Part shown: positions 22,467 through 34,280 of the stretch, piece by piece
Numbering within the stretch: position 1 is the first letter of the stretch
How the letters are laid out: the number at the start of each line of letters is the position of its first letter
DNA from: Salpingoeca rosetta
Taxonomy: Eukaryota > Protista > Choanoflagellata
Reading direction: 5' to 3'
Length of the DNA stretch: 64,000 nt
NCBI GenBank assembly: GCA_033442325.1
Contig: JAWQFM010000016.1
Span: 1,221,679-1,285,678 of the forward strand
Program-made: the position numbers and the translations under genes
The notes under the pieces: generated by a model
Databases searched by the model: none
Told to the model about the DNA's origin: nothing
The model's input: the letters and a program-made list of their open reading frames with translations, nothing else

Positions 22467-23989
22467 TCACTCGTCGTTCTCGGCCTCGCCAATGAGGCCC
22501 ATGAGAAGGTCGCGGTAGTGGCCGCTCGTCTCCTTCTTGATGGTGCGCGCAAGAGACTTGCCATGCACGCTAGGGTACACCTCCTTGATCTGCTCCATGT
22601 CAACCTGTTACGACGTTCGCCCAAGCGTGGCGCACATGGTGGATGATGAGCATCAACGGGCCAGGCACGTGCGCGTGCATGTGGAAGGATCAAATGCACG
22701 CATCGCTCGCATATGCTTGGGAAACGCCTGCACATACACACCTCTGAGCGGGAGACGATGATGCGCATGAGGGCGAGGTCGTCGGTGCCCAGGCCGTGGC
22801 ACGCCTTGTAGATGCGCGTGGCAAAGTAGCGCGCGGGGTTGCGGGCGCACGACACAATCGCAATCATGCCTGAGCATCACATCACATCACAGCACATCAC
22901 ATCACATACAGCGGTTGACACCGAGGCAGAAGGGGGCCGGGGGTTGAATCAAATGAAATGAATACAACCTGGCGGGACTGACACATTGAAAAACTGACAT
23001 CCACGCGCACACATGAACACATCCACGCATAAACACGCACAAACACGCGCACACATAACACATGATCACACAAAACACATGTGCACGCATGCAGCAAGAC
23101 GCACCGCGAGCAAGGTCCTTCGAGAGACGGCGCTTGAGGGTGTGCGTGATGTCTTTGCCAGACACCTCCAGATATGCGTTGCACGTGGCGCGGATCTGGG
23201 CAGGGCTGCGCAGCGCAAGCACCTGCACCACCACATCGCGGATGGACGGAAGCATACAAGGTGAACATTCCGTGACGCAAGAAACGGTACGGGAGGGGTT
23301 GGGAGTGGTGTGGACGTGGAAACACTGCTGTTGCTGTTCTGTGTCAAGCAACATCACGCAAGTTGCGAACATCTCAACAATACATGGGTGTGCGTGGCAC
23401 TGGTGCGCACAGCCCACCTGGTTGAGTGATGACTCATCGGTGAACCATCCCTTGGTGCTCTTGTGCAGCAGCTTGGCTTCCTTCCTGCGGCGGGCCGTGT
23501 CACAAGCAGAGGGATCAAGTGCAGGGGAGTAGCAGTAGGCAGTGTGTGTGTGTGTGTGTGATGAGGGATTGATATCGGCATGCACACATCATGCACGTGT
23601 GTGCACACACACACACACACGCACAACACACACAGACAATAGCAGCGCTGTGACGACTGACATTGCGAGCTCCTCGTCGACTTCATCAGAGATGTTGCGT
23701 CCACCTTGCAGCAGCGACACGAGAAGGCGCTTGTAGTTGCCGCCCGTCTCGCTGATCACAACCTTCTCAAGGTCCTTGCCATAGCGGCTGTCACACGCGC
23801 ATGGGTGATGGGGAGCTCGTTAGGATGGCGGTGGCAAACATGCACGTGCTGATCTTTCAAGATTGACGGCGACTGCACGCAAACGCACGAGCAAGTGGGC
23901 ATTGGACACCACTACACCATGCACATGTGCAAGCCGCGATGGCTGCCGATTACATGCGCATATGTGCACGTGTGCGTGTGTGTGTCTGC

Positions 23990-24033
<44 letters not shown>

Positions 24034-25952
24034 TGTGTGTCTGCATTGTGTGGTGTGCCATACCGCTTGTAGGCCTCCTTGACGGCAGCAATTTCCTCGT
24101 TGTTGCGGGTGCAGATGATCTCAATCAGCGTGCTGTCCGTTGTGCCCATGCCGGCAACAGCCTGTGACAGTGCAACGCGCAGACAGGAGAGAAAGAACAG
24201 TGTTGGAGAAGGCAATGAGAGGGGTTGCTGTCAGCACACAAACAAACAAACAAACAAACAAACAAACAAACAAACAAACAAACAAAACAAACAATCTCAT
24301 CAAATCACACCTTGTGGATTGACCAGGCGTCGAATTCGGCGGGGCTCTTCATCATGCACTGCACGAGATCGCCCGTCTTCCCGCCAACTTCAGACTTGAG
24401 CGACTTGAGCAGATCCTGGTGCGGCAGTGACATGGTGGTGATGTTGCGGTGTCGATGGTGTTATGTTGTTGTGGTGATGGTCACGTTTGTGTCAGGTGAA
24501 ATGCGAGAAGCAACCCGTGCACATGCGTACGTGTAGCAGTGATAGAAACACAGGACACAAAGTTCAGATGCCTCAGTGGCATTGTGTCGAGGATACACTC
24601 TACTGTGCCGTACCTTTCCGTACATGGTCTTGTACGTGGTGATGAGGGAGCGACGCTGCTCGTTGTTCCCCTTCAGCATCACCTCCACCACCTTGTCTTT
24701 GTCGCAGCCAAACCCGCGCATGGCCTGCAAATTGCGCGGGGGGGGGGAAGGAGTGAGGAAGAGGGGAATAGGGGAAGAGGGAAGAGGGGAAAGCAACGAC
24801 ACGCGTGTGTTTGTATGCATTATGTGGTTGAGCAATTAGGGACAGTCATCAGCCATTTGTGACAACATTCGCGGTCCACACACAAACAACAAAGGCAGCA
24901 ACAATCATGAATCTCATCATCATCATCACCACCACCACCACGAAGAGTCGCTATCACCACCACCACCATCAAGTCCGCACCTTCTTGAGGATGCGGCAGT
25001 TCTCCTCTGCGTCGTAGTCTTCAGCGGCGTGCACGGTGCCGGATGTTGGTGGGAGTGCAACTTCGGGCTCAACCATCGCCTCGCGCACATTCTCAGGCTC
25101 CTCATCCTCGTCCTCCTGATATGACAGGTTGCAGGTGAAGACGGAAGGGGGGGGGGGCATGGGTTGAGAGGGAAGGGCAGGAAGGGAAGGGAAACATGAT
25201 GTGGGTGTGAATGTGTGAATGTGTGTTTGTTGTGTGTTTGTATTCATGTGTGTGATTGTGTGTGATTGTGCGAGTTTGCATGTGCGTGCGTTCGAAAATG
25301 AAAGGAGACGCACAGATCACAAACATATTATGCGCGTGCAAAATGAGAGTGTGCACGTGGTTGGATGACGTTGCACATGTATGAACAAGCAAGCGCTGAG
25401 GGAAGCAGGTGGCAGTGTCGCGTACACCCACGCGTGCAACAAGCGCCCCGCTGATAGCAGCCCATGGGTGTTTCACGTACCGAGTCGGAGTCAGAACCAG
25501 AACCAGAGCCTTCTTCTTCCTCTTCTTCCTCTTCCTCCTCTTCTTCCTCCTCCTCCTCCTCCTCACTCTCGTCTTCTTCACTCTCGTCTTCCTCTTCGTC
25601 GTCGTCCTCAACAGCTTCGATCATCGCCGCAAGCTGCTCTTCCATCTCCTGTCAAGTGCAAGTGCACGCGCACATCACGAACGCGTATGAGAAGGGGCGA
25701 GAGGGTTGAAGCAGTTTATGTGTGTGTTTGAATGTGCGTGTTGAATGTATGTGTTTGAATGTGTTTGAATGTGTGTGTGTGTGTGTGTGTGAATGTGTGT
25801 GTCCGAATGTGTGCGCGTGTGTGTTTGAACATGTGTCTGTGTTTGGAGACATACATATGTTTGTTACACGTGACACCGTACCTCGCGCATGCGTTCCTGC
25901 TCCTCCTGCATCCGCTGGCGCTCTTCCTCCATTGCAGCGCGAGCCTAACGCG

Positions 25953-26019
<67 letters not shown>

Positions 26020-29000
26020 GCGCGCGTGCACACCCATGCATTTGGCTCGTCAGTACTGCGAGGAATAGGAACCAATGTTATAAACAACGCAAGTCCGATG
26101 AGAATGCACACTACCACCACCACCACCACCACCACCTGTTGTCACTGCATGTACCGCTGCAGCCATGAGCACGTGCTCACCTCCTCCATTTCCTCGCGCA
26201 TGCGTTCGACCTCCTCTTCCATCTCGGCGCGCGCGTCATCGTCAAGCCGCTCCGCTTCCTCCTCCTTCTCCGCAACTGCAGCAGATATGCGTGACCGTGG
26301 CGTGTGAATGATGGGGCGTACGCAGGTGAGAGCGTGCACATGTGTGGCGAGTAGCGTGTGTATGTGTAAGCGTGTGTGTGACATGTGAGCTTGTGACATC
26401 AACTGGGTGATTGAGTGTGGAAGATTCAAGCGACAAAGCACCCATGCACATGAGATGCACGGGTCACCTTCGTCGTCGTCAATTTCGTCATCAGAGTCCT
26501 CCATCTCAAGAATGGAGTCAATCACTGCCACGAAATTGCACAACAGCGAGAAAGTGTGAGCACGGCCATACAACTGTGGACTGATGTATATGCGTGCGTG
26601 CGTGCGTGTGTGTGTGTGTGTGTGTGTGTGTACGCGTGCGAGTGTGTTTTGATTGTGATGTGTTGGCACCTTCAGGCGTCGGCTCCTCCTGAAGGCGAGA
26701 TGCGACTGCAAGCATCACACAACCAACACAACATAGGATGGCGTCAGGATGAGTCATCGTGTGCGGGCATGCGTGCACGTACATATGAATGCCGCACACG
26801 ACACAAATAGAGCAAAGCGCTTGCCTTCACACATCCACATGCATGCACTCGTCCCAACCCACTCCCCGGCCCAAGTGAAACATCCCACCCGCTCCCATTG
26901 CACGATATCGCACATTCATCGAGCGCGTTTTCGGCGTCATCATCCACGTCCTCCTCCTGCAGTTGCAGTGATCGGCGGTTGGCAGTGGTAATGGTGATGG
27001 TGGTGGTGGTGGTGGTGGTGGTGGTGAGATGGGGTTGCAAGCGACAACTGATGATAGTGGTAATGGTGATGGTGGTGGTGGTGGTGGTGGTGGTGGTGGT
27101 GAGATGGGGTTGCAAGCGACAACTGATGATAGTGGTGGTGGTGGTGGTGGTGGTGGTGGTGGTGGTGGTGGTGGTGAGATGGGGCTGCAAACGACAACTG
27201 ATGATAATGGTGCATGGCTGTGTATCTCTCACTCCACAGTGTCCGTCAGCAAAGCACCAGTTGCACACAAGGGCCAGCACGTCTACACTGACCATGACAC
27301 GGCGCTTGTGCATGCGATAACGCTTCTGCTGCAGTTTCTGCTGCGCGGCCGCCTGCAGGAAGAGAGGAAACATCGCCTGCATCGCCGCGCTCATGGCAAG
27401 CATTTGCTCCCTGACGTACACACGTGTGTGCGTATGTGCGTGTGAATGCGTGGTGGTTTGCGTGATTGAATGTGTTATTGGTTGTTGCTGAAAGGTGAGC
27501 AACCACTGCGTCCATCATGATCATCACCACCACCTGTGTGCCTTTACAAACCATCATCGCCCTCCCTCTCCACGTTATCGACATCATGTGCACCACGAAC
27601 AAATGTGCGCTTACATGCGATCGTCAGCGCTCATGCCAAGAAGATCGTTGAACTCCGGCGGGGCGGACCGCACCACCTCATCCGCGCTCGGCTCCGGCGA
27701 CCCTGCAGTGGTGGCGGTGGTGGCATGAGTGGTGGTGATAGTAGTGGTGGTGGTGGTGGTGGTGGTGGTGGTGGTGGTGGTGGTGGTGGTGATAGTAGTA
27801 GTAGTAGTAGTGGTGGTGGTGGTGGTGGTGGTGGTGGTGATAGTAGTAGTAGTAGTAGTGGTGGTGGTGGTGGTGGTGGTGGTGGTGGTGGTGGCGGTGG
27901 CGTGAGTTTGGGAGAATAATGAAGGGTGCGGAAGGGACGGCATGGCATGATGTGTCTCGATTGAGCGACTCCATACAGGGGAGTTGTGCTCTCCCATTCG
28001 CAATCCCCATACCACAACACGTCCGGTACCTACGCACATACACACATGCACACACACACACACGCATGCACACACACACACACATACGCATGCACACATA
28101 CGTACACACACATATATACACGCGCACCGAAGTCGTCATCGTCATCGTCTTCGTCCTCCCCATCCATGATGGCCTGCAGACGAGGTGGCAGCTCCTCCTG
28201 TCACGGTGGTGGTGGTGTTGGTGATGGTGGTGGTGGTGTTGGTGATGATGGTGGTGTTGGTGATGATGGTGGTGTTGGTGATGATGGTGGTAATAGTGTT
28301 GGCGCACGAGAACAAGTTCTTGCACACGTGCTACGAACGACACACATGCATGCACACAATGCACACAACACACGCACAAAGTGCACGCACTTCGACGTGC
28401 AGAGCAAACTTGGTGGCGAAGCGAGAATCCTACACGGGTGATGTGATACGCTTGTGTTCATGAGTACACCCGTTCGAGCAACACTCATGCAGGTAAAGTA
28501 TGCTTCCTCTTCACAACCACCAACCGCCACAGGCATCGCAAGCACACAAGCACACAAGCACACAAGCACACGCGCGCACACACACACGCACGCACACACA
28601 CACGCACAAACAAACAAACAAACAAACAAACAAACAAACAAACAAACAAACAAACAAACAAACAAACAAACAAACAAACAAACAAACAAACAAACAAACA
28701 AACAAACAAACAAAACAAACAAACAAACAAACAAACACACACACACACACACAAACAAAACACACCTTCTCCACGGCGCGAACGTTGCCCTTGCTCTGGC
28801 CGAGTGCAAAGGCGCCGCTGGCGTCCAGGATGAGAAAGGACCCGTCGTCCTGCTGCTCAACAGACACGGGGCATCCCGTTGGAGATGCAGTCACCATCGT
28901 GCCTGCAGGCAATCGGTCGAAGTGGGGCGGGGAGGGGGATGGGATTCAAAGAGCAAGGAAGGGTGTTCGTGAGGCCATGCAATTGTGTGCTCGTGTGATC

Positions 29001-31529
29001 GTGTGTTCAGCATGTGTGCATGAGTGCGTGCGTGCACACGCAATGCGTGCATCAGACAGGCAACATCAAGTGTGTTAACAGGCTGCTGACGACTGCAATG
29101 ATGCTGAACATGCGGTGTCATGTAATCGCACCTGCAAAGAAGAGGTACGACTTGTTCTTGATGCTGCACATTCAACACATGAGCACGATGAAGGGGACGT
29201 GGTGAGAACATTCAAACACGTGTGACATAACTTCATCCTCTTGCACAACGCAGTAAATTGCAATTACGCGCACGCTGCACACGCGAGCGTGCTTGCAAAA
29301 AGCATTTGGCATGAGCCTTGTGGGTGCGTGTGCGCTTGACCTCGAACCTCTTCAGGAACATCTGGTCGCCCTTCATCTCCACAACAATGTAGGGCTGCAG
29401 CCCAGCACCGCCTGACACCAGCGTGATTGCAGCAAGCGGGTGGGCACGGTTGTGAATAGTGATGATGACGATGACATGATTGCAACTTGTGATCGAGGTT
29501 GTCATTGTGAATGGTGATGATGGTTGCTGTGATGCATGGTGTACATGCGTGCACGCACCTCGGCAGTCGACCTTCTTCTTCTTCAGGAAACGCAGGAAGT
29601 GCTTGTGGCCCTGTCATATGCAGCACACACACACACACACACACACAACGCACGCGTACGTTATGGCAGATGGGCACACAGAAGCAAGGATACAGGTGAG
29701 CTCACAAATCCGCACGAGGCGATAGCACAAGCGCGCATACACGCACACACATACACATACACGTACACACACACACGTACACACACGTACACACACACGC
29801 ACACACACACGTACACACACACGTACACACACACACGTACACACACGTACACACACACAGCAGCAGAAGGAGGAGGAGTGACAAAGGCGGGAGCGCGGCA
29901 CGATGGCATGCTGGCCGCACCACGGGCGCTGCGCGGAAGACGACGCCGTCATCGAGCTCGACCTCCGGGATGTTGGTCACGGGCACACGGCCAGACTGAA
30001 GGCACAGCACATGCAAACACAGCAAATGTGAATGCACGCAGGCACAGCACACGCAGACATGGGCATGTGTACATGTGGCAATGAGGGGGTGAGGGATGGC
30101 GTAGAAACGTGGTGGGGACGCCAAGACAAAGCATGCAATGGAGAGTGTGTATGGGGACGAGGGGGTTTTGCACACTTCGCTCGACAAACAACACTCAACA
30201 AACAACACTGTACCTTGGTGTACGGCATGAACTTGCAGGCCGCAATGGGACGGCTCTGTGAGCGCAACGCATCACACACAGGTGCATTGCAAGCGGTCCG
30301 TGTGTGAGAGGGAAGGAAATTCAAACCTGCAGCCAAGTTCAGCGCGACACAACCACAACAGGAGCAATGACAGAGTTGATGGCAGGAGGGACAACTCACG
30401 GCACGGAGCATGATGGCCTTTCGACCAACGGCGCAGAGGTAGCGCCGGCCACCAGGGTTGGTGAAGGCAACATAGCCTGAGCACAGCCCGTTTCAGGTGA
30501 ACAGAAGATGAGTAAGGGTCAAGGAGCGTGAGTAGCGGTGAGGGTGAGCGCCAGTGGTCGTGAGCGAAGGTGAACGGTCGTGGGCAACGCTGAGAGCCAA
30601 GGTGGATGGAGATGATAGGTGCTGGGTCATCAGCACATCGCAGGATGCCGTCTCTCGCAACATTGTCGCATCATATCACTGGCATGAGCATGGCCTCCCT
30701 CCCCCCAACACGGATCACACACCGTTGCCGGCATCCACCATCTTGAGCTGGCGCTCGCAGTCGACGCGGGGCCGGCCGCCACGCACACCGACCATCACGC
30801 CAGCAAATTCACTGTGGCACGAACACAGCGACACGAGCAAGAAGCAAGTAGGTGAGAACCAGTGCAGCACTTGTGAGTGTGTGCTTGTGAGTGTGTGTGT
30901 GTGTGTGTCAAACAGAATACTTTGACATTTGAACATCGTGGCATATGAACACCTTGGCATATGCACCCTTTGAACGCTGAGCACATTGCGCGCACTGTGG
31001 CCACGCTACTGCACGTACGACAGGCGGGCTCAGCGTACCCACAATCTAACCCTTCCCAGGAGAACCTCAAGCACACTGTCACACCACACCTCACCGCCAA
31101 CGGAAAGCACGAAAGACGCAACAAATACCACACACGCACTTGATGAGGTTGATGCCTTCGTCTGGTTCGCCGGAGACGGAGAACCAGACCAGCTTTCCTT
31201 TGCCGCCTTTCACGTCAACTTTTCCCTGGCGGTTCACACGCAGAGCCTTCTTGGAGGTCTGCAAAAGAAGAAGGGTAGGCAAAAAAAAAACCACGCAAGG
31301 CCAGGCAGACCACACCAATCGTCATGTAAACAAAACGGCAACCCACGCCCACCTCTGCCTGCTCCAGTTCCTTTCGTTGTTTGCACGACCCTACACCACT
31401 CGTCCCACACGTTTGAGAACCAAAACAAACCCGTAACAAACCCACCCCACAGCACGCCGCACCACAGCACACCTTGCATACGAAGCGAAGGCTCTCCTCG
31501 AGGTTGCACAACTCCTGAAGCGTGGGCAT
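22467..31529 (-). CDS. Annexin with a very long N-terminus: two fascin-like beta-trefoil units + acidic/coiled-coil linker + 4-repeat annexin core (~29 exons)
   Basis: Annexin core (22467-25115): [66 protein letters not shown]...[17 protein letters not shown]. Upstream exons join in compatible phase, without a stop, back to ATG 31529 ([19 protein letters not shown]). Annexin identity is certain; the fusion rests on manual splicing. Confidence 0.8.
26987..27204 (+). repeat. Three-copy composite minisatellite: (GGT)n + GAGATGGGG(T/C)TGCAA(G/A)CGACAACTGATGATA, intronic
   Basis: Three near-identical units of about 70 bp with variable GGT tract length. Confidence 0.85.
28607..28735 (+). repeat. 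(AAAC)n tetranucleotide microsatellite, intronic
   Basis: Long AAAC run; similar runs at ~19275-19323 and ~24239-24292. Confidence 0.9.

Positions 31530-31833: not shown

Positions 31834-34280
<2,447 letters not shown>

What the first reader, a model, noticed from the sequence alone, without database searches (positions are those of the whole stretch)
22467..31529. Fascin-like beta-trefoil x2 - acidic coiled coil - annexin fusion: candidate Ca2+-regulated actin-membrane linker
Seen: manual splicing gives one uninterrupted frame over ~29 GT-AG exons. The N-terminus has an internal duplication ([26 protein letters not shown] versus [26 protein letters not shown]) and fascin-type strands ([16 protein letters not shown]; [15 protein letters not shown]; [15 protein letters not shown]...TKFALH), consistent with two 3-fold beta-trefoils. 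An E/R-rich helix and poly-E/D tracts follow, then a complete annexin core. Established: fascin-type trefoils bind or bundle F-actin, annexins bind anionic membranes via Ca2+, and the choanoflagellate collar is made of actin-bundle microvilli. Inference: an architecture I do not know from animal annexins that could tether actin bundles to membrane or act in wound repair. One donor (GTTCGA, ~29347) is weak, and the trefoils could instead be lectin-like.
Basis: partly seen in the sequence, partly recalled or inferred. Interest (0 to 1): 0.82.

Follow-up and report, generated by a model that had tools for sequence, protein, structure and literature searches.

The report
Annexin with fascin-like trefoil head
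A Salpingoeca rosetta gene encodes, on one messenger RNA, a calcium-dependent membrane-binding annexin with a long front end that looks like two fascin-type beta-trefoil domains plus a very acidic spacer; this build is not described for annexins in the papers searched, and whether it links actin to membranes is untested.

Summary
On the minus strand, 29 GT-AG exons (31529 to 22467) splice into one open frame of 848 residues.

Stranded RNA-seq reads and transcript contigs from three other studies confirm every junction from exon 10 to exon 23. That spans trefoil half 2, the acidic linker and annexin repeat 1. Assembly breaks only inside the poly-GAG stretch of exon 20, so "two separate transcripts" is effectively refuted.

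The C-terminus is a true four-repeat annexin. Repeats 1, 2 and 4 keep their type II Ca2+ sites; repeat 3 has lost its site.

The spliced N-terminal domain has no reference, so it could not be folded or scanned whole. Profiles I built from 102 fascins match residues about 164-259 across a whole trefoil (hhalign P 2e-5, about 10 SD above shuffles). The first half is only marginal (P 0.018) and rests partly on a weak internal duplication.

It is not a fascin-family member. A coiled coil is not shown. Actin binding is inference only.

Verdict: a real, expressed new variant of annexin. The function is open and the interest moderate.

The parts
22467..31529 (-). Whole coding region: 29 exons, 848 codons plus stop
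   Evidence: Spliced model. GC3 is 0.67-0.80 in the exons against 0.52 in the introns.
29972..31529 (-). N-terminal domain, first half (aa 1-136; exons 1-6 in part); basic, pI 10.0; candidate beta-trefoil 1
   Evidence: hhalign against the fascin-trefoil profile gives P 0.018, and 3 of 300 shuffles score as high. It aligns to the second half at 27% over 89 aa, E 0.002. Exon pieces give no Pfam hit. Support is weak.
28391..29971 (-). N-terminal domain, second half (aa 137-261; exons 6 in part to 11); fascin-type beta-trefoil-like
   Evidence: The custom trefoil HMM scores 17.1 bits, with aa 164-259 on HMM positions 23-123 of 131; the best of 2000 shuffles is 9.7. hhalign scores 32.0, P 2e-5, over 93 columns; shuffles give 10.9 +/- 2.1. 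Ten non-trefoil controls score 2.5 bits or less. Exons 7-10 are conserved in a relative.
29342..29347 (-). Weak donor GTTCGA of intron 8
   Evidence: The relative has GTGCGC at the same codon position, followed by a 32-nt exon 9 of the same length.
25032..28197 (-). Acidic linker (aa 262-535; exons 12-21 in part): 114 D+E against 22 K+R, pI 4.05, 19 Met
   Evidence: Composition. All of its exon junctions are confirmed by RNA reads and contigs.
27293..27410 (-). Exon 14: Met/Ala-rich helix-like stretch ending in a basic cluster ([14 protein letters not shown]-like)
   Evidence: Read from the sequence. Junctions are confirmed. The motif reading is inference only.
25604..26275 (-). E/R/M-rich helix-like segment (aa about 399-466; exons 18, 19 and the start of 20)
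   Evidence: Read from the sequence. Heptad periodicity is not significant (p 0.08), so a coiled coil is not shown.
25481..25603 (-). Poly-E/D and GS/DS tract at the 3' end of exon 20; transcript assemblies break here
   Evidence: Contigs of about 1.55 kb and 1.51 kb end here. The reads tool masks 25478-25573 as a repeat. Reads enter from both sides.
22467..25031 (-). Annexin core with four repeats (aa 536-848; exons 21 in part to 29)
   Evidence: Pfam PF00191 lies above cut-off on exons 22, 24, 28 and 29 and on exon 27. PDB annexins A6, A7, XII, A4 and A5 match at E down to 1e-25.
24311..25031 (-). Annexin repeat 1: AB loop G-F-G-C with Glu in the K-S-E position
   Evidence: Alignment of the four repeats. 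The site is probably intact; Thr is replaced by Cys.
23718..24361 (-). Annexin repeat 2: canonical G-M-G-T with Glu (I-S-E)
22856..23690 (-). Annexin repeat 3: degenerate loop (G-W-F-T), and Arg where the acidic ligand should be
   Evidence: The type II Ca2+ site is lost.
22488..22855 (-). Annexin repeat 4: canonical G-L-G-T with Glu (K-K-E)

Best explanation
What it is. One expressed S. rosetta gene makes a protein of about 95 kDa with three parts. (1) A basic N-terminal head of about 260 residues (net charge +16, pI 9.7). It is an internal duplication, and at least the second copy is a fascin-type beta-trefoil. (2) An extremely acidic linker of about 270 residues (net -92), Met-rich and partly helical. 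(3) A standard four-repeat annexin core.

Shown. The single transcript, the annexin identity, and the trefoil-like profile match of the second half.

Inferred mechanism. When Ca2+ rises, the annexin core docks on acidic phospholipids through the intact type II sites of repeats 1, 2 and 4. The trefoil head takes the place of the variable, partner-binding N-terminus that all annexins have, and recruits a second partner to that membrane. F-actin is the leading candidate for that partner, at roughly 30%, because the nearest profile is fascin and because fascin and hisactophilin trefoils bind actin. An acidic lipid, a glycan, RNA or another protein are about as likely taken together.

The polyanionic linker probably masks the basic head and/or the annexin face at rest, and may also buffer Ca2+.
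For: Gene model and frame.

One transcript. Read joints or loose ends confirm every junction from exon 10 to exon 23 in a stranded raw RNA-seq run. The same junctions appear in contigs from three other studies. Contig lengths (about 1547-1614 nt upstream of the exon 20 repeat, about 1506-1516 nt downstream of it) fit exons 1-20 plus a 5'UTR and exons 20-29 plus a 3'UTR. Per-exon depth, as I estimated it from the binned depths, shows no step between the two sides, and no cluster of molecule starts or ends is reported.

Annexin.

Trefoil. HMM of single fascin trefoils: 17.1 bits, aa 164-259 on HMM 23-123 of 131, 0 of 2000 shuffles as high. hhalign: P 2e-5, with a shuffle null of 10.9 +/- 2.1 against 32.0 observed. 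Controls that carry the same QQDDG-type hairpin motif score 2.5 bits or less. A bulb-lectin-type repeat profile fits only 33 columns.

Duplication. Charges and pI. Conservation of exons 7-10 in a relative.
Against: No structure model could be made. The spliced protein has no reference, so AlphaFold, the Pfam whole-domain scan and the word search could not take it.

The first half is only marginally trefoil-like.

Pfam Fascin and FRG1 scans of the genome do not touch this locus, and the exon pieces hit no Pfam family.

Pairwise similarity to the organism's own fascin is not significant.

No full-length orthologue was found, so conservation of the fusion is unknown. In one metagenomic relative, the orthologous annexin segment lies about 490 nt downstream of an unrelated JPT/HN1-like gene, with no recognisable exon 21 or 22 in between.

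Nothing here tests actin, lipid or Ca2+ binding, or autoinhibition.
Confidence: 0.55

Rival explanations
1. The head binds or bundles F-actin as fascin does, so the protein is a Ca2+-switched actin-to-membrane tether, for example at the base of the collar microvilli or in wound repair.
For: The best profile match of the second half is to fascin trefoils. The head is strongly basic, as actin-binding surfaces often are. Established knowledge: fascin and hisactophilin trefoils bind actin. The same genome has a gelsolin match 2.7 kb upstream of another annexin on the same strand. That hints at a theme of annexins joined to actin-binding modules.
Against: There are only two trefoils, whereas fascin's actin sites are built from four. 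The domain is not a fascin-family member by Pfam. Fascin's actin-binding residues could not be mapped. The organism already has two true fascins. There is no binding or localisation data.
Confidence: 0.25
2. The head is a trefoil-type ligand-binding module with no link to actin. It could be lectin-like, bind phosphoinositides or RNA, or be a protein adaptor. On this reading the protein bridges two membranes, or a membrane and a non-cytoskeletal partner.
For: Beta-trefoils are functionally very diverse (established knowledge). The head is basic enough to bind anionic lipids or nucleic acids. The similarity to fascin is only at profile level. The exon 10 hairpin also resembles bulb-lectin strands.
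Against: There is no signal peptide, so a classical extracellular lectin role is unlikely. The bulb-lectin-type repeat profile fits only a short motif. Ricin-type QxW motifs are not seen in the sequence. None of this was tested.
Confidence: 0.3
3. The N-terminal 260 residues are not beta-trefoils at all but some other all-beta or novel fold. On this reading the profile match reflects a shared strand pattern.
For: No structure model exists. There are no Pfam, PDB-sequence or Atlas hits for the exon pieces. The first half is only marginal.
Against: The match of the second half covers 93 of about 130 trefoil columns and lies about 10 SD above shuffles. Proteins that carry the same hairpin motif do not score. 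The two halves are duplicates of about 125 residues, which is the size of a trefoil.
Confidence: 0.2
4. There are two genes or transcripts, an upstream trefoil/acidic protein and a downstream annexin, and the single frame is an artefact of manual splicing.
For: Transcript assemblies break inside exon 20. The tool masks 25478-25573, so no read was laid across about 40-95 nt of poly-GAG.
Against: The break lies inside one uninterrupted exon. Reads enter it from both sides. Depth is similar on both sides. No cluster of molecule ends is reported. Junctions 20/21 and 19/20 are both confirmed.
Confidence: 0.03

Closest known systems
Annexins with long N-terminal heads (vertebrate A7/synexin and A11, Dictyostelium annexin C1, A6 as a double core)
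   Same: A four-repeat Ca2+/phospholipid-binding core at the C-terminus. The variable N-terminus is the part that confers partner specificity. The exon pieces match solved A6, A7, XII, A4 and A5.
   Different: Those heads are short or are low-complexity Gly/Tyr/Pro regions. Here the head is a folded, duplicated, trefoil-like domain of about 260 residues, followed by a linker of about 270 residues with net charge -92. No paper in the held library describes a trefoil-annexin.
Fascin (four tandem beta-trefoils; Pfam PF06268)
   Same: The second half aligns to a generic fascin-trefoil profile over nearly the whole trefoil.
   Different: There are at most two trefoils, not four. No Pfam Fascin match lies at this locus, while the genome's two true fascins score 30-59 bits. 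Pairwise similarity is not significant. Actin bundling needs sites that are built between fascin's four trefoils (established knowledge).
Hisactophilin (Dictyostelium single beta-trefoil actin-membrane linker)
   Same: In concept, a trefoil that joins actin to the inner face of the membrane under ionic control. This comparison is from my own knowledge and was not tested here.
   Different: Hisactophilin anchors by a myristoyl group and switches with pH through its histidines. This protein would anchor through an annexin core and switch with Ca2+. It has no Gly2 for myristoylation.
Annexin A2 as an actin-membrane organiser
   Same: An annexin proposed to link F-actin to PIP2-rich membrane (PMC3634455, abstract seen).
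   Different: A2 is thought to contact actin through its core/C-terminus and through S100A10, not through a dedicated N-terminal domain.

Membership tests
Annexin (PF00191) | Four tandem annexin repeats of about 70 residues | tested here: met
   Pfam hits lie above the 25-bit cut-off on exons 22 (R1), 24 (R2), 28 and 29 (R4) and on exon 27 (R3) in the six-frame scan. The four repeats align to each other.
Annexin (PF00191) | Type II Ca2+ site: a G-x-G-T loop plus an acidic residue about 38 positions on | tested here: met
   R2 (GMGT...E) and R4 (GLGT...E) are canonical. R1 is GFGC...E. R3 has lost its site (GWFT, with Arg at the acidic position). Three of four sites are plausible. Actual binding was not tested.
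Annexin (PF00191) | Ca2+-dependent binding to acidic phospholipids | not testable with these tools
   Needs a liposome assay.
Fascin (PF06268) | Match to the family model above its cut-off | tested here: not met
   The exon pieces give no Pfam hit at E up to 10. The six-frame Pfam Fascin scan of the genome finds only the loci on contigs C13 and C27. My full-length fascin HMM gives 7.9 bits. The whole spliced domain could not be given to Pfam.
Fascin (PF06268) | Four tandem beta-trefoils | tested here: not met
   The domain is about 260 residues, which is two units of about 125.
Fascin (PF06268) | F-actin binding and bundling | not testable with these tools
   Needs co-sedimentation or bundling assays.
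Beta-trefoil fold (fascin/FRG1-type superfamily) | Profile similarity across a whole trefoil of about 125 residues | tested here: met
   Second half: hhalign P 2e-5 over 93 columns, about 10 SD above 300 shuffles; HMM 17.1 bits against a maximum of 9.7 in 2000 shuffles; controls 2.5 bits or less.
Beta-trefoil fold (fascin/FRG1-type superfamily) | The same for the first half | tested here: inconclusive
   hhalign P 0.018, with 3 of 300 shuffles as high. It aligns to the second half at E 0.002.
Beta-trefoil fold (fascin/FRG1-type superfamily) | Twelve-stranded barrel with three-fold pseudo-symmetry in three dimensions | not tested
   The spliced sequence has no reference, so structure prediction and fold search were left out.
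Coiled coil | Significant heptad periodicity of hydrophobic residues | tested here: inconclusive
   For aa 410-466 the best a/d occupancy is 0.44 against a shuffle mean of 0.33, p 0.08. For aa 399-470, p is 0.34.

The most novel reading that the evidence does not exclude
A choanoflagellate-lineage invention: a Ca2+-switched tether in which a fascin-type double trefoil holds F-actin and an annexin core holds the membrane, kept off at rest by its own polyanionic linker. It could be one of a small set of annexins in S. rosetta joined to actin-binding modules, alongside the apparent gelsolin-annexin locus on genome contig C6. Such a set could act at the collar microvilli or in cortex repair.
Probability: 0.18. 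Interest if true: 0.7.

Novelty: new variant of a known kind. Interest (0 to 1): 0.45.

Why it matters
Annexins are defined by a constant core and a variable head that decides what they connect to. A folded, duplicated, trefoil-like head joined by an extreme polyanionic spacer is a build not reported in the annexin papers I could search.

It occurs in the closest living relatives of animals, whose feeding collar is an actin-microvillar structure. If the head binds actin, the protein would be a simple one-polypeptide model of Ca2+-controlled attachment of the cortex to the membrane. It would also be an example of the domain shuffling of cytoskeletal modules that preceded animals.

S. rosetta can be genetically manipulated, so the idea is testable. 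If the head binds something else, the protein is still a clean case for studying how annexin heads evolve. As it stands this is a well-supported architecture with an open function.

Tried and rejected
1. Pfam on ten exon pieces. Nothing on the N-terminal exons.

2. The one big representative search, with exon 10. No full-length protein came back. The only true relative was P0006, a 98-aa genomic reading frame at 53% identity. The other six hits are repeat proteins that share a short QQDDG-F-hairpin motif (SprB repeats, B_lectin and the like). I rejected them as homologues.

3. PDB sequence search with exons 10 and 2. Only bulb-lectin motif matches at E 0.6-1, or nothing.

4. ESM Atlas with exon 10. 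No usable hit.

5. Six-frame Pfam scans of the genome with Fascin, B_lectin and FRG1. None touches this locus.

6. Pairwise blastp and phmmer against S. rosetta fascin. Not significant.

7. Metagenome scan with an exon 10 alignment. 185 pattern matches, none a relative.

8. A workaround for the word search's length window. I aligned exon pieces to a long non-coding reading frame from the window (alignment A1) to reach proteins of about 850 aa. MAFFT scattered the pieces and the search returned nothing. This result carries no information.

9. The last word search, with a 228-aa open frame that holds exons 26 and 27. It found one 186-aa relative, P0128, at 84% identity. Its contigs do not show the upstream part of the gene.

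11. The heptad test for a coiled coil was not significant.

12. Steps left out because the spliced protein has no reference and long letters must not be typed: a whole-domain Pfam scan, AlphaFold plus fold search, a word search with the full protein, and a look-up of the annotated protein.

Full report
ORGANISM AND LOCUS

The window is contig C16:1221679-1285678 of a 55.4-Mb, 68-contig assembly. A reading frame elsewhere in this assembly is 100% identical to the protein that public databases name 'fascin 2A [Salpingoeca rosetta]'. The window therefore comes from the choanoflagellate S. rosetta.

GENE MODEL

The gene lies on the minus strand. I anchored on the open segments of the three minus-strand frames. 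I then required a GT donor, an AG acceptor and frame continuity at each junction. This gives 29 exons of 32-168 nt and 28 introns of 137-425 nt (median 218). The CDS is 2547 nt and encodes 848 residues, about 95 kDa, with a single terminal stop.

Five junctions have an alternative site 3 nt away that would add or remove one residue. Reads chose the longer form at exon 11/12. The donor of intron 8 is indeed GTTCGA.

Third-position GC is 0.67-0.80 in each exon group, including exons 1-6, against 0.52 in the introns. The ATG at 31529 is the first after an in-frame stop five codons upstream.

ONE TRANSCRIPT OR TWO?

Twenty runs hold part of the stretch. About 15 of them hold 0.12-0.20 of the sampled words, close to the 0.16 that I calculate for exons alone.

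The accepted call covered 24600-28605.

In a stranded raw RNA-seq run, reads lie on exons only, and the first mates lie almost entirely on the plus strand. That fits a minus-strand RNA in the usual stranded libraries. Joints or loose ends reproduce every predicted junction:
- 10/11: reads at 28431 continue into 28768 and beyond.
- 11/12 and 12/13: loose ends match 28168-28197 and 28129 onward. Exon 12 itself was masked as repeat.
- 13/14, 14/15, 15/16, 16/17, 17/18 and 19/20: seen as read joints.
- 18/19: seen in the contig pieces, not as a read joint.
- 20/21: reads at 25116 continue into 25481 and beyond.
- 22/23: reads at 24613 continue into exon 23.
- 21/22: seen in the contig pieces.

Contigs from three other studies show the same joints. 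Each run has one contig of about 1.55-1.61 kb. It starts in exon 20 and runs 910-988 nt past exon 13. Exons 1-12 need 853 nt, so 57-135 nt are left for a 5'UTR. Each run also has a second contig of about 1.51 kb that runs from the 3' end of exon 20 to the 3'UTR.

The only gap is the poly-GAG tract inside exon 20, which the tool masks (25478-25573). Reads enter it from both sides. Depth per exon base, as I estimated it from the binned depths, varies between about 15 and 56 with no step between the head side and the annexin side. No cluster of molecule starts or ends is reported.

I take the single transcript as shown for exons 10-23 and as very likely for the whole gene.

COMPARATIVE SUPPORT FOR THE HEAD EXONS

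The exhaustive representative search with exon 10 returned one true relative, a 98-aa genomic reading frame (P0006, 53% identity). It lies on two contigs of about 1.5 kb assembled from public sequencing runs.

Those contigs carry orthologues of exons 7, 8, 9 and 10 with the same intron positions and phases. Exon 9 is 32 nt in both. The donor after exon 8 is a strong GTGCGC at the very position of S. rosetta's weak GTTCGA. The weak donor is therefore not a reason to doubt the model.

THE ANNEXIN CORE

Pfam Annexin matches exons 22, 24, 28 and 29 above the curated cut-off. The six-frame genome scan adds exon 27, so all four repeats are hit. Exon pieces match solved annexins A6, A7, XII, A4 and A5 at E down to 1e-25.

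Aligning the four repeats to each other shows the type II Ca2+-site signature in three of them:
- Repeat 1: GFGC plus Glu.
- Repeat 2: GMGT plus Glu.
- Repeat 4: GLGT plus Glu.
- Repeat 3: lost (GWFT, with Arg at the acidic position).

That annexins bind acidic phospholipids through such sites is established knowledge. It was not tested here. This is one of about seven annexin loci in the genome. Exon 10 of the head has no paralogue.

THE LINKER

Residues 262-535 hold 114 Asp+Glu against 22 Lys+Arg (net -92, pI 4.05) and 19 Met. The linker includes:
- a Met/Ala-rich stretch ending in a basic cluster (exon 14);
- an E/R/M-rich segment that looks helical (aa about 399-466);
- a poly-Glu run of about 17-20 residues followed by GS/DS repeats.

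A simple heptad test does not reach significance (p 0.08 for aa 410-466, p 0.34 for aa 399-470). 'Coiled coil' therefore remains a guess.

THE HEAD

Residues 1-261 are basic (net +16, pI 9.7). The two halves align to each other at 27% over 89 residues (E 0.002 in a two-sequence comparison).

The spliced protein exists under no reference, so it could not be given to Pfam, to the structure predictor or to the word search. The exon pieces alone hit nothing in Pfam, the PDB or the Atlas beyond a short bulb-lectin-like hairpin.

The genome has two true fascin genes, one of them with an intron-free reading frame. With that one I collected 120 fascins and aligned 102 of them. From these I built a full-length fascin HMM. 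I also built a 'generic trefoil' HMM from 204 single trefoils.

Full-length HMM. It scores the head 7.9 bits, against a maximum of 4.6 in 2000 shuffles.

Generic trefoil HMM. It scores 17.1 bits. One domain aligns residues 164-259 to positions 23-123 of 131, with an independent E-value of 0.0028 in a set of 2002 sequences. The best shuffle scores 9.7.

hhalign results:
- Second half: score 32.0, P 2e-5, 93 columns. 300 shuffles give 10.9 +/- 2.1, maximum 18.4.
- First half: score 17.0, P 0.018, 48 columns. 3 of 300 shuffles reach it.

Controls. Ten non-trefoil proteins score 2.5 bits or less. They include the repeat proteins that share the QQDDG hairpin motif and this protein's own linker and annexin core. 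The relative's exon 10 reading frame scores 5.9 bits at the matching HMM positions. A profile of bulb-lectin-type repeats fits the second half over only 33 columns (P 0.0013).

Reading. The second half is very probably a fascin-type beta-trefoil. The first half is probably its diverged duplicate. The domain is not a member of the fascin family as Pfam defines it, and it has two units, not four.

CONSERVATION OF THE FUSION

This stays open. The word search sees only proteins of 0.55-1.75 times the query length, and no stop-free reference from this gene exceeds 259 residues. Proteins of about 850 residues were therefore out of reach. A workaround with a long non-coding reading frame from the window gave nothing.

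The last search found a 186-aa relative at 84% identity to residues 589-763. It lies on two metagenomic contigs. There introns 23-26 are absent and intron 27 is kept. Upstream, a JPT/HN1-like gene ends about 490 nt before the annexin segment, with no recognisable exon 21 or 22. This could be a different gene structure, a partial copy or a mis-assembly. It neither shows nor excludes the head in that organism.

HOW IT MOST LIKELY WORKS

Shown: one polypeptide joins a basic trefoil-like head, a polyanionic spacer and an annexin core.

From established knowledge of annexins: the core docks on acidic membranes when Ca2+ rises, and the N-terminal region determines partners.

Inference: the head brings a second ligand to that membrane. 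F-actin is the leading single candidate, at about 25-30%, on the strength of the fascin-type profile and the precedents of fascin and hisactophilin. Trefoils also bind sugars, lipids, RNA and proteins, and two trefoils cannot reproduce fascin's four-trefoil bundling geometry.

The contrast between +16 and -92 makes intramolecular masking of the head (or of the annexin's membrane face) at rest attractive. Low-affinity Ca2+ buffering by the linker is also possible. Both ideas are untested.

It hints that joining actin-binding modules to annexins may recur in this genome.

NOVELTY AND VERDICT

Four full-text searches found no paper on S. rosetta or Monosiga annexin architectures or on a trefoil-annexin. 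The library is incomplete, and the gene is presumably present in the public annotation.

I class it as a new variant of a known kind. It is a bona fide annexin with an undescribed folded head. The decisive missing computation is a structure prediction of residues 1-262. The decisive experiments are listed in the field for decisive next steps.

Noticed in passing
G000:C6:1512075-1512272 and C6:1515005-1515994 (own genome, not this window): A Pfam Gelsolin match lies 2.7 kb upstream of two Annexin matches on the same strand. I did not check whether they are one gene.
   Followed up: partly
G000:C13:1343560-1344615 (L004:1435-2925) and G000:C27:76638-78418: The genome has two true four-trefoil fascin genes. 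The one on C13 is a single open frame of 497 aa, identical to the public 'fascin 2A [Salpingoeca rosetta]'.
   Followed up: yes
L011:1-2222 and L012:1-1040 (ENA metagenome contigs): A relative's orthologue of residues 589-804 (84% identity) lacks introns 23-26 but keeps intron 27. In L011 a complete JPT/HN1-like small gene (repeated SSRVLAPPGG motif) ends about 490 nt upstream on the same strand. No exon 21 or 22 is recognisable there.
   Followed up: partly
window 27293-27410 (-), exon 14: A Met/Ala-rich helix-like stretch ends in [12 protein letters not shown]. This is an IQ-like or basic cluster that could be a calmodulin-, lipid- or importin-binding site. Exon 13 holds an EFNDLLGM motif. 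Both readings are from the sequence only.
   Followed up: no
window 28606-28714, 24235-24285, 27740-27900, 26985-27190, 25945-26020, 29720-29860: The introns of this gene are packed with microsatellites. These include (CAAA)n in introns 10 and 23, (GGT)n blocks with (AGT)n in intron 12, a unit of about 60 nt repeated three times with (GGT)n in intron 14, and (CA)n or (CACACGTA)n elsewhere. They stopped the first read-laying request.
   Followed up: no
window 31835-31890 (+): A divergently oriented neighbour gene starts about 300 nt from this gene's ATG. Its product begins MASIKEGFLVKEGRKYK, which looks like the start of a PH domain. The two genes probably share a promoter region.
   Followed up: no
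window 24738-24906, 25136-25269, 27414-27547, 28486-28605: One contig run (X5, and partly X12 and X4) has low-depth contigs inside introns, with loose ends that lead to unrelated sequence. They may be unspliced RNA, DNA carry-over or repeats from elsewhere. A little antisense signal is seen over 25538-26341 in the stranded run.
   Followed up: no
window 28835-28870 (-), exon 10: The strand-turn-strand motif [13 protein letters not shown] draws many false hits in large searches. These are archaeal and bacterial SVQQTDDGGF repeat proteins and bulb-lectin MQDDGNFVIY repeats, and their scores add up over many repeats.
   Followed up: yes
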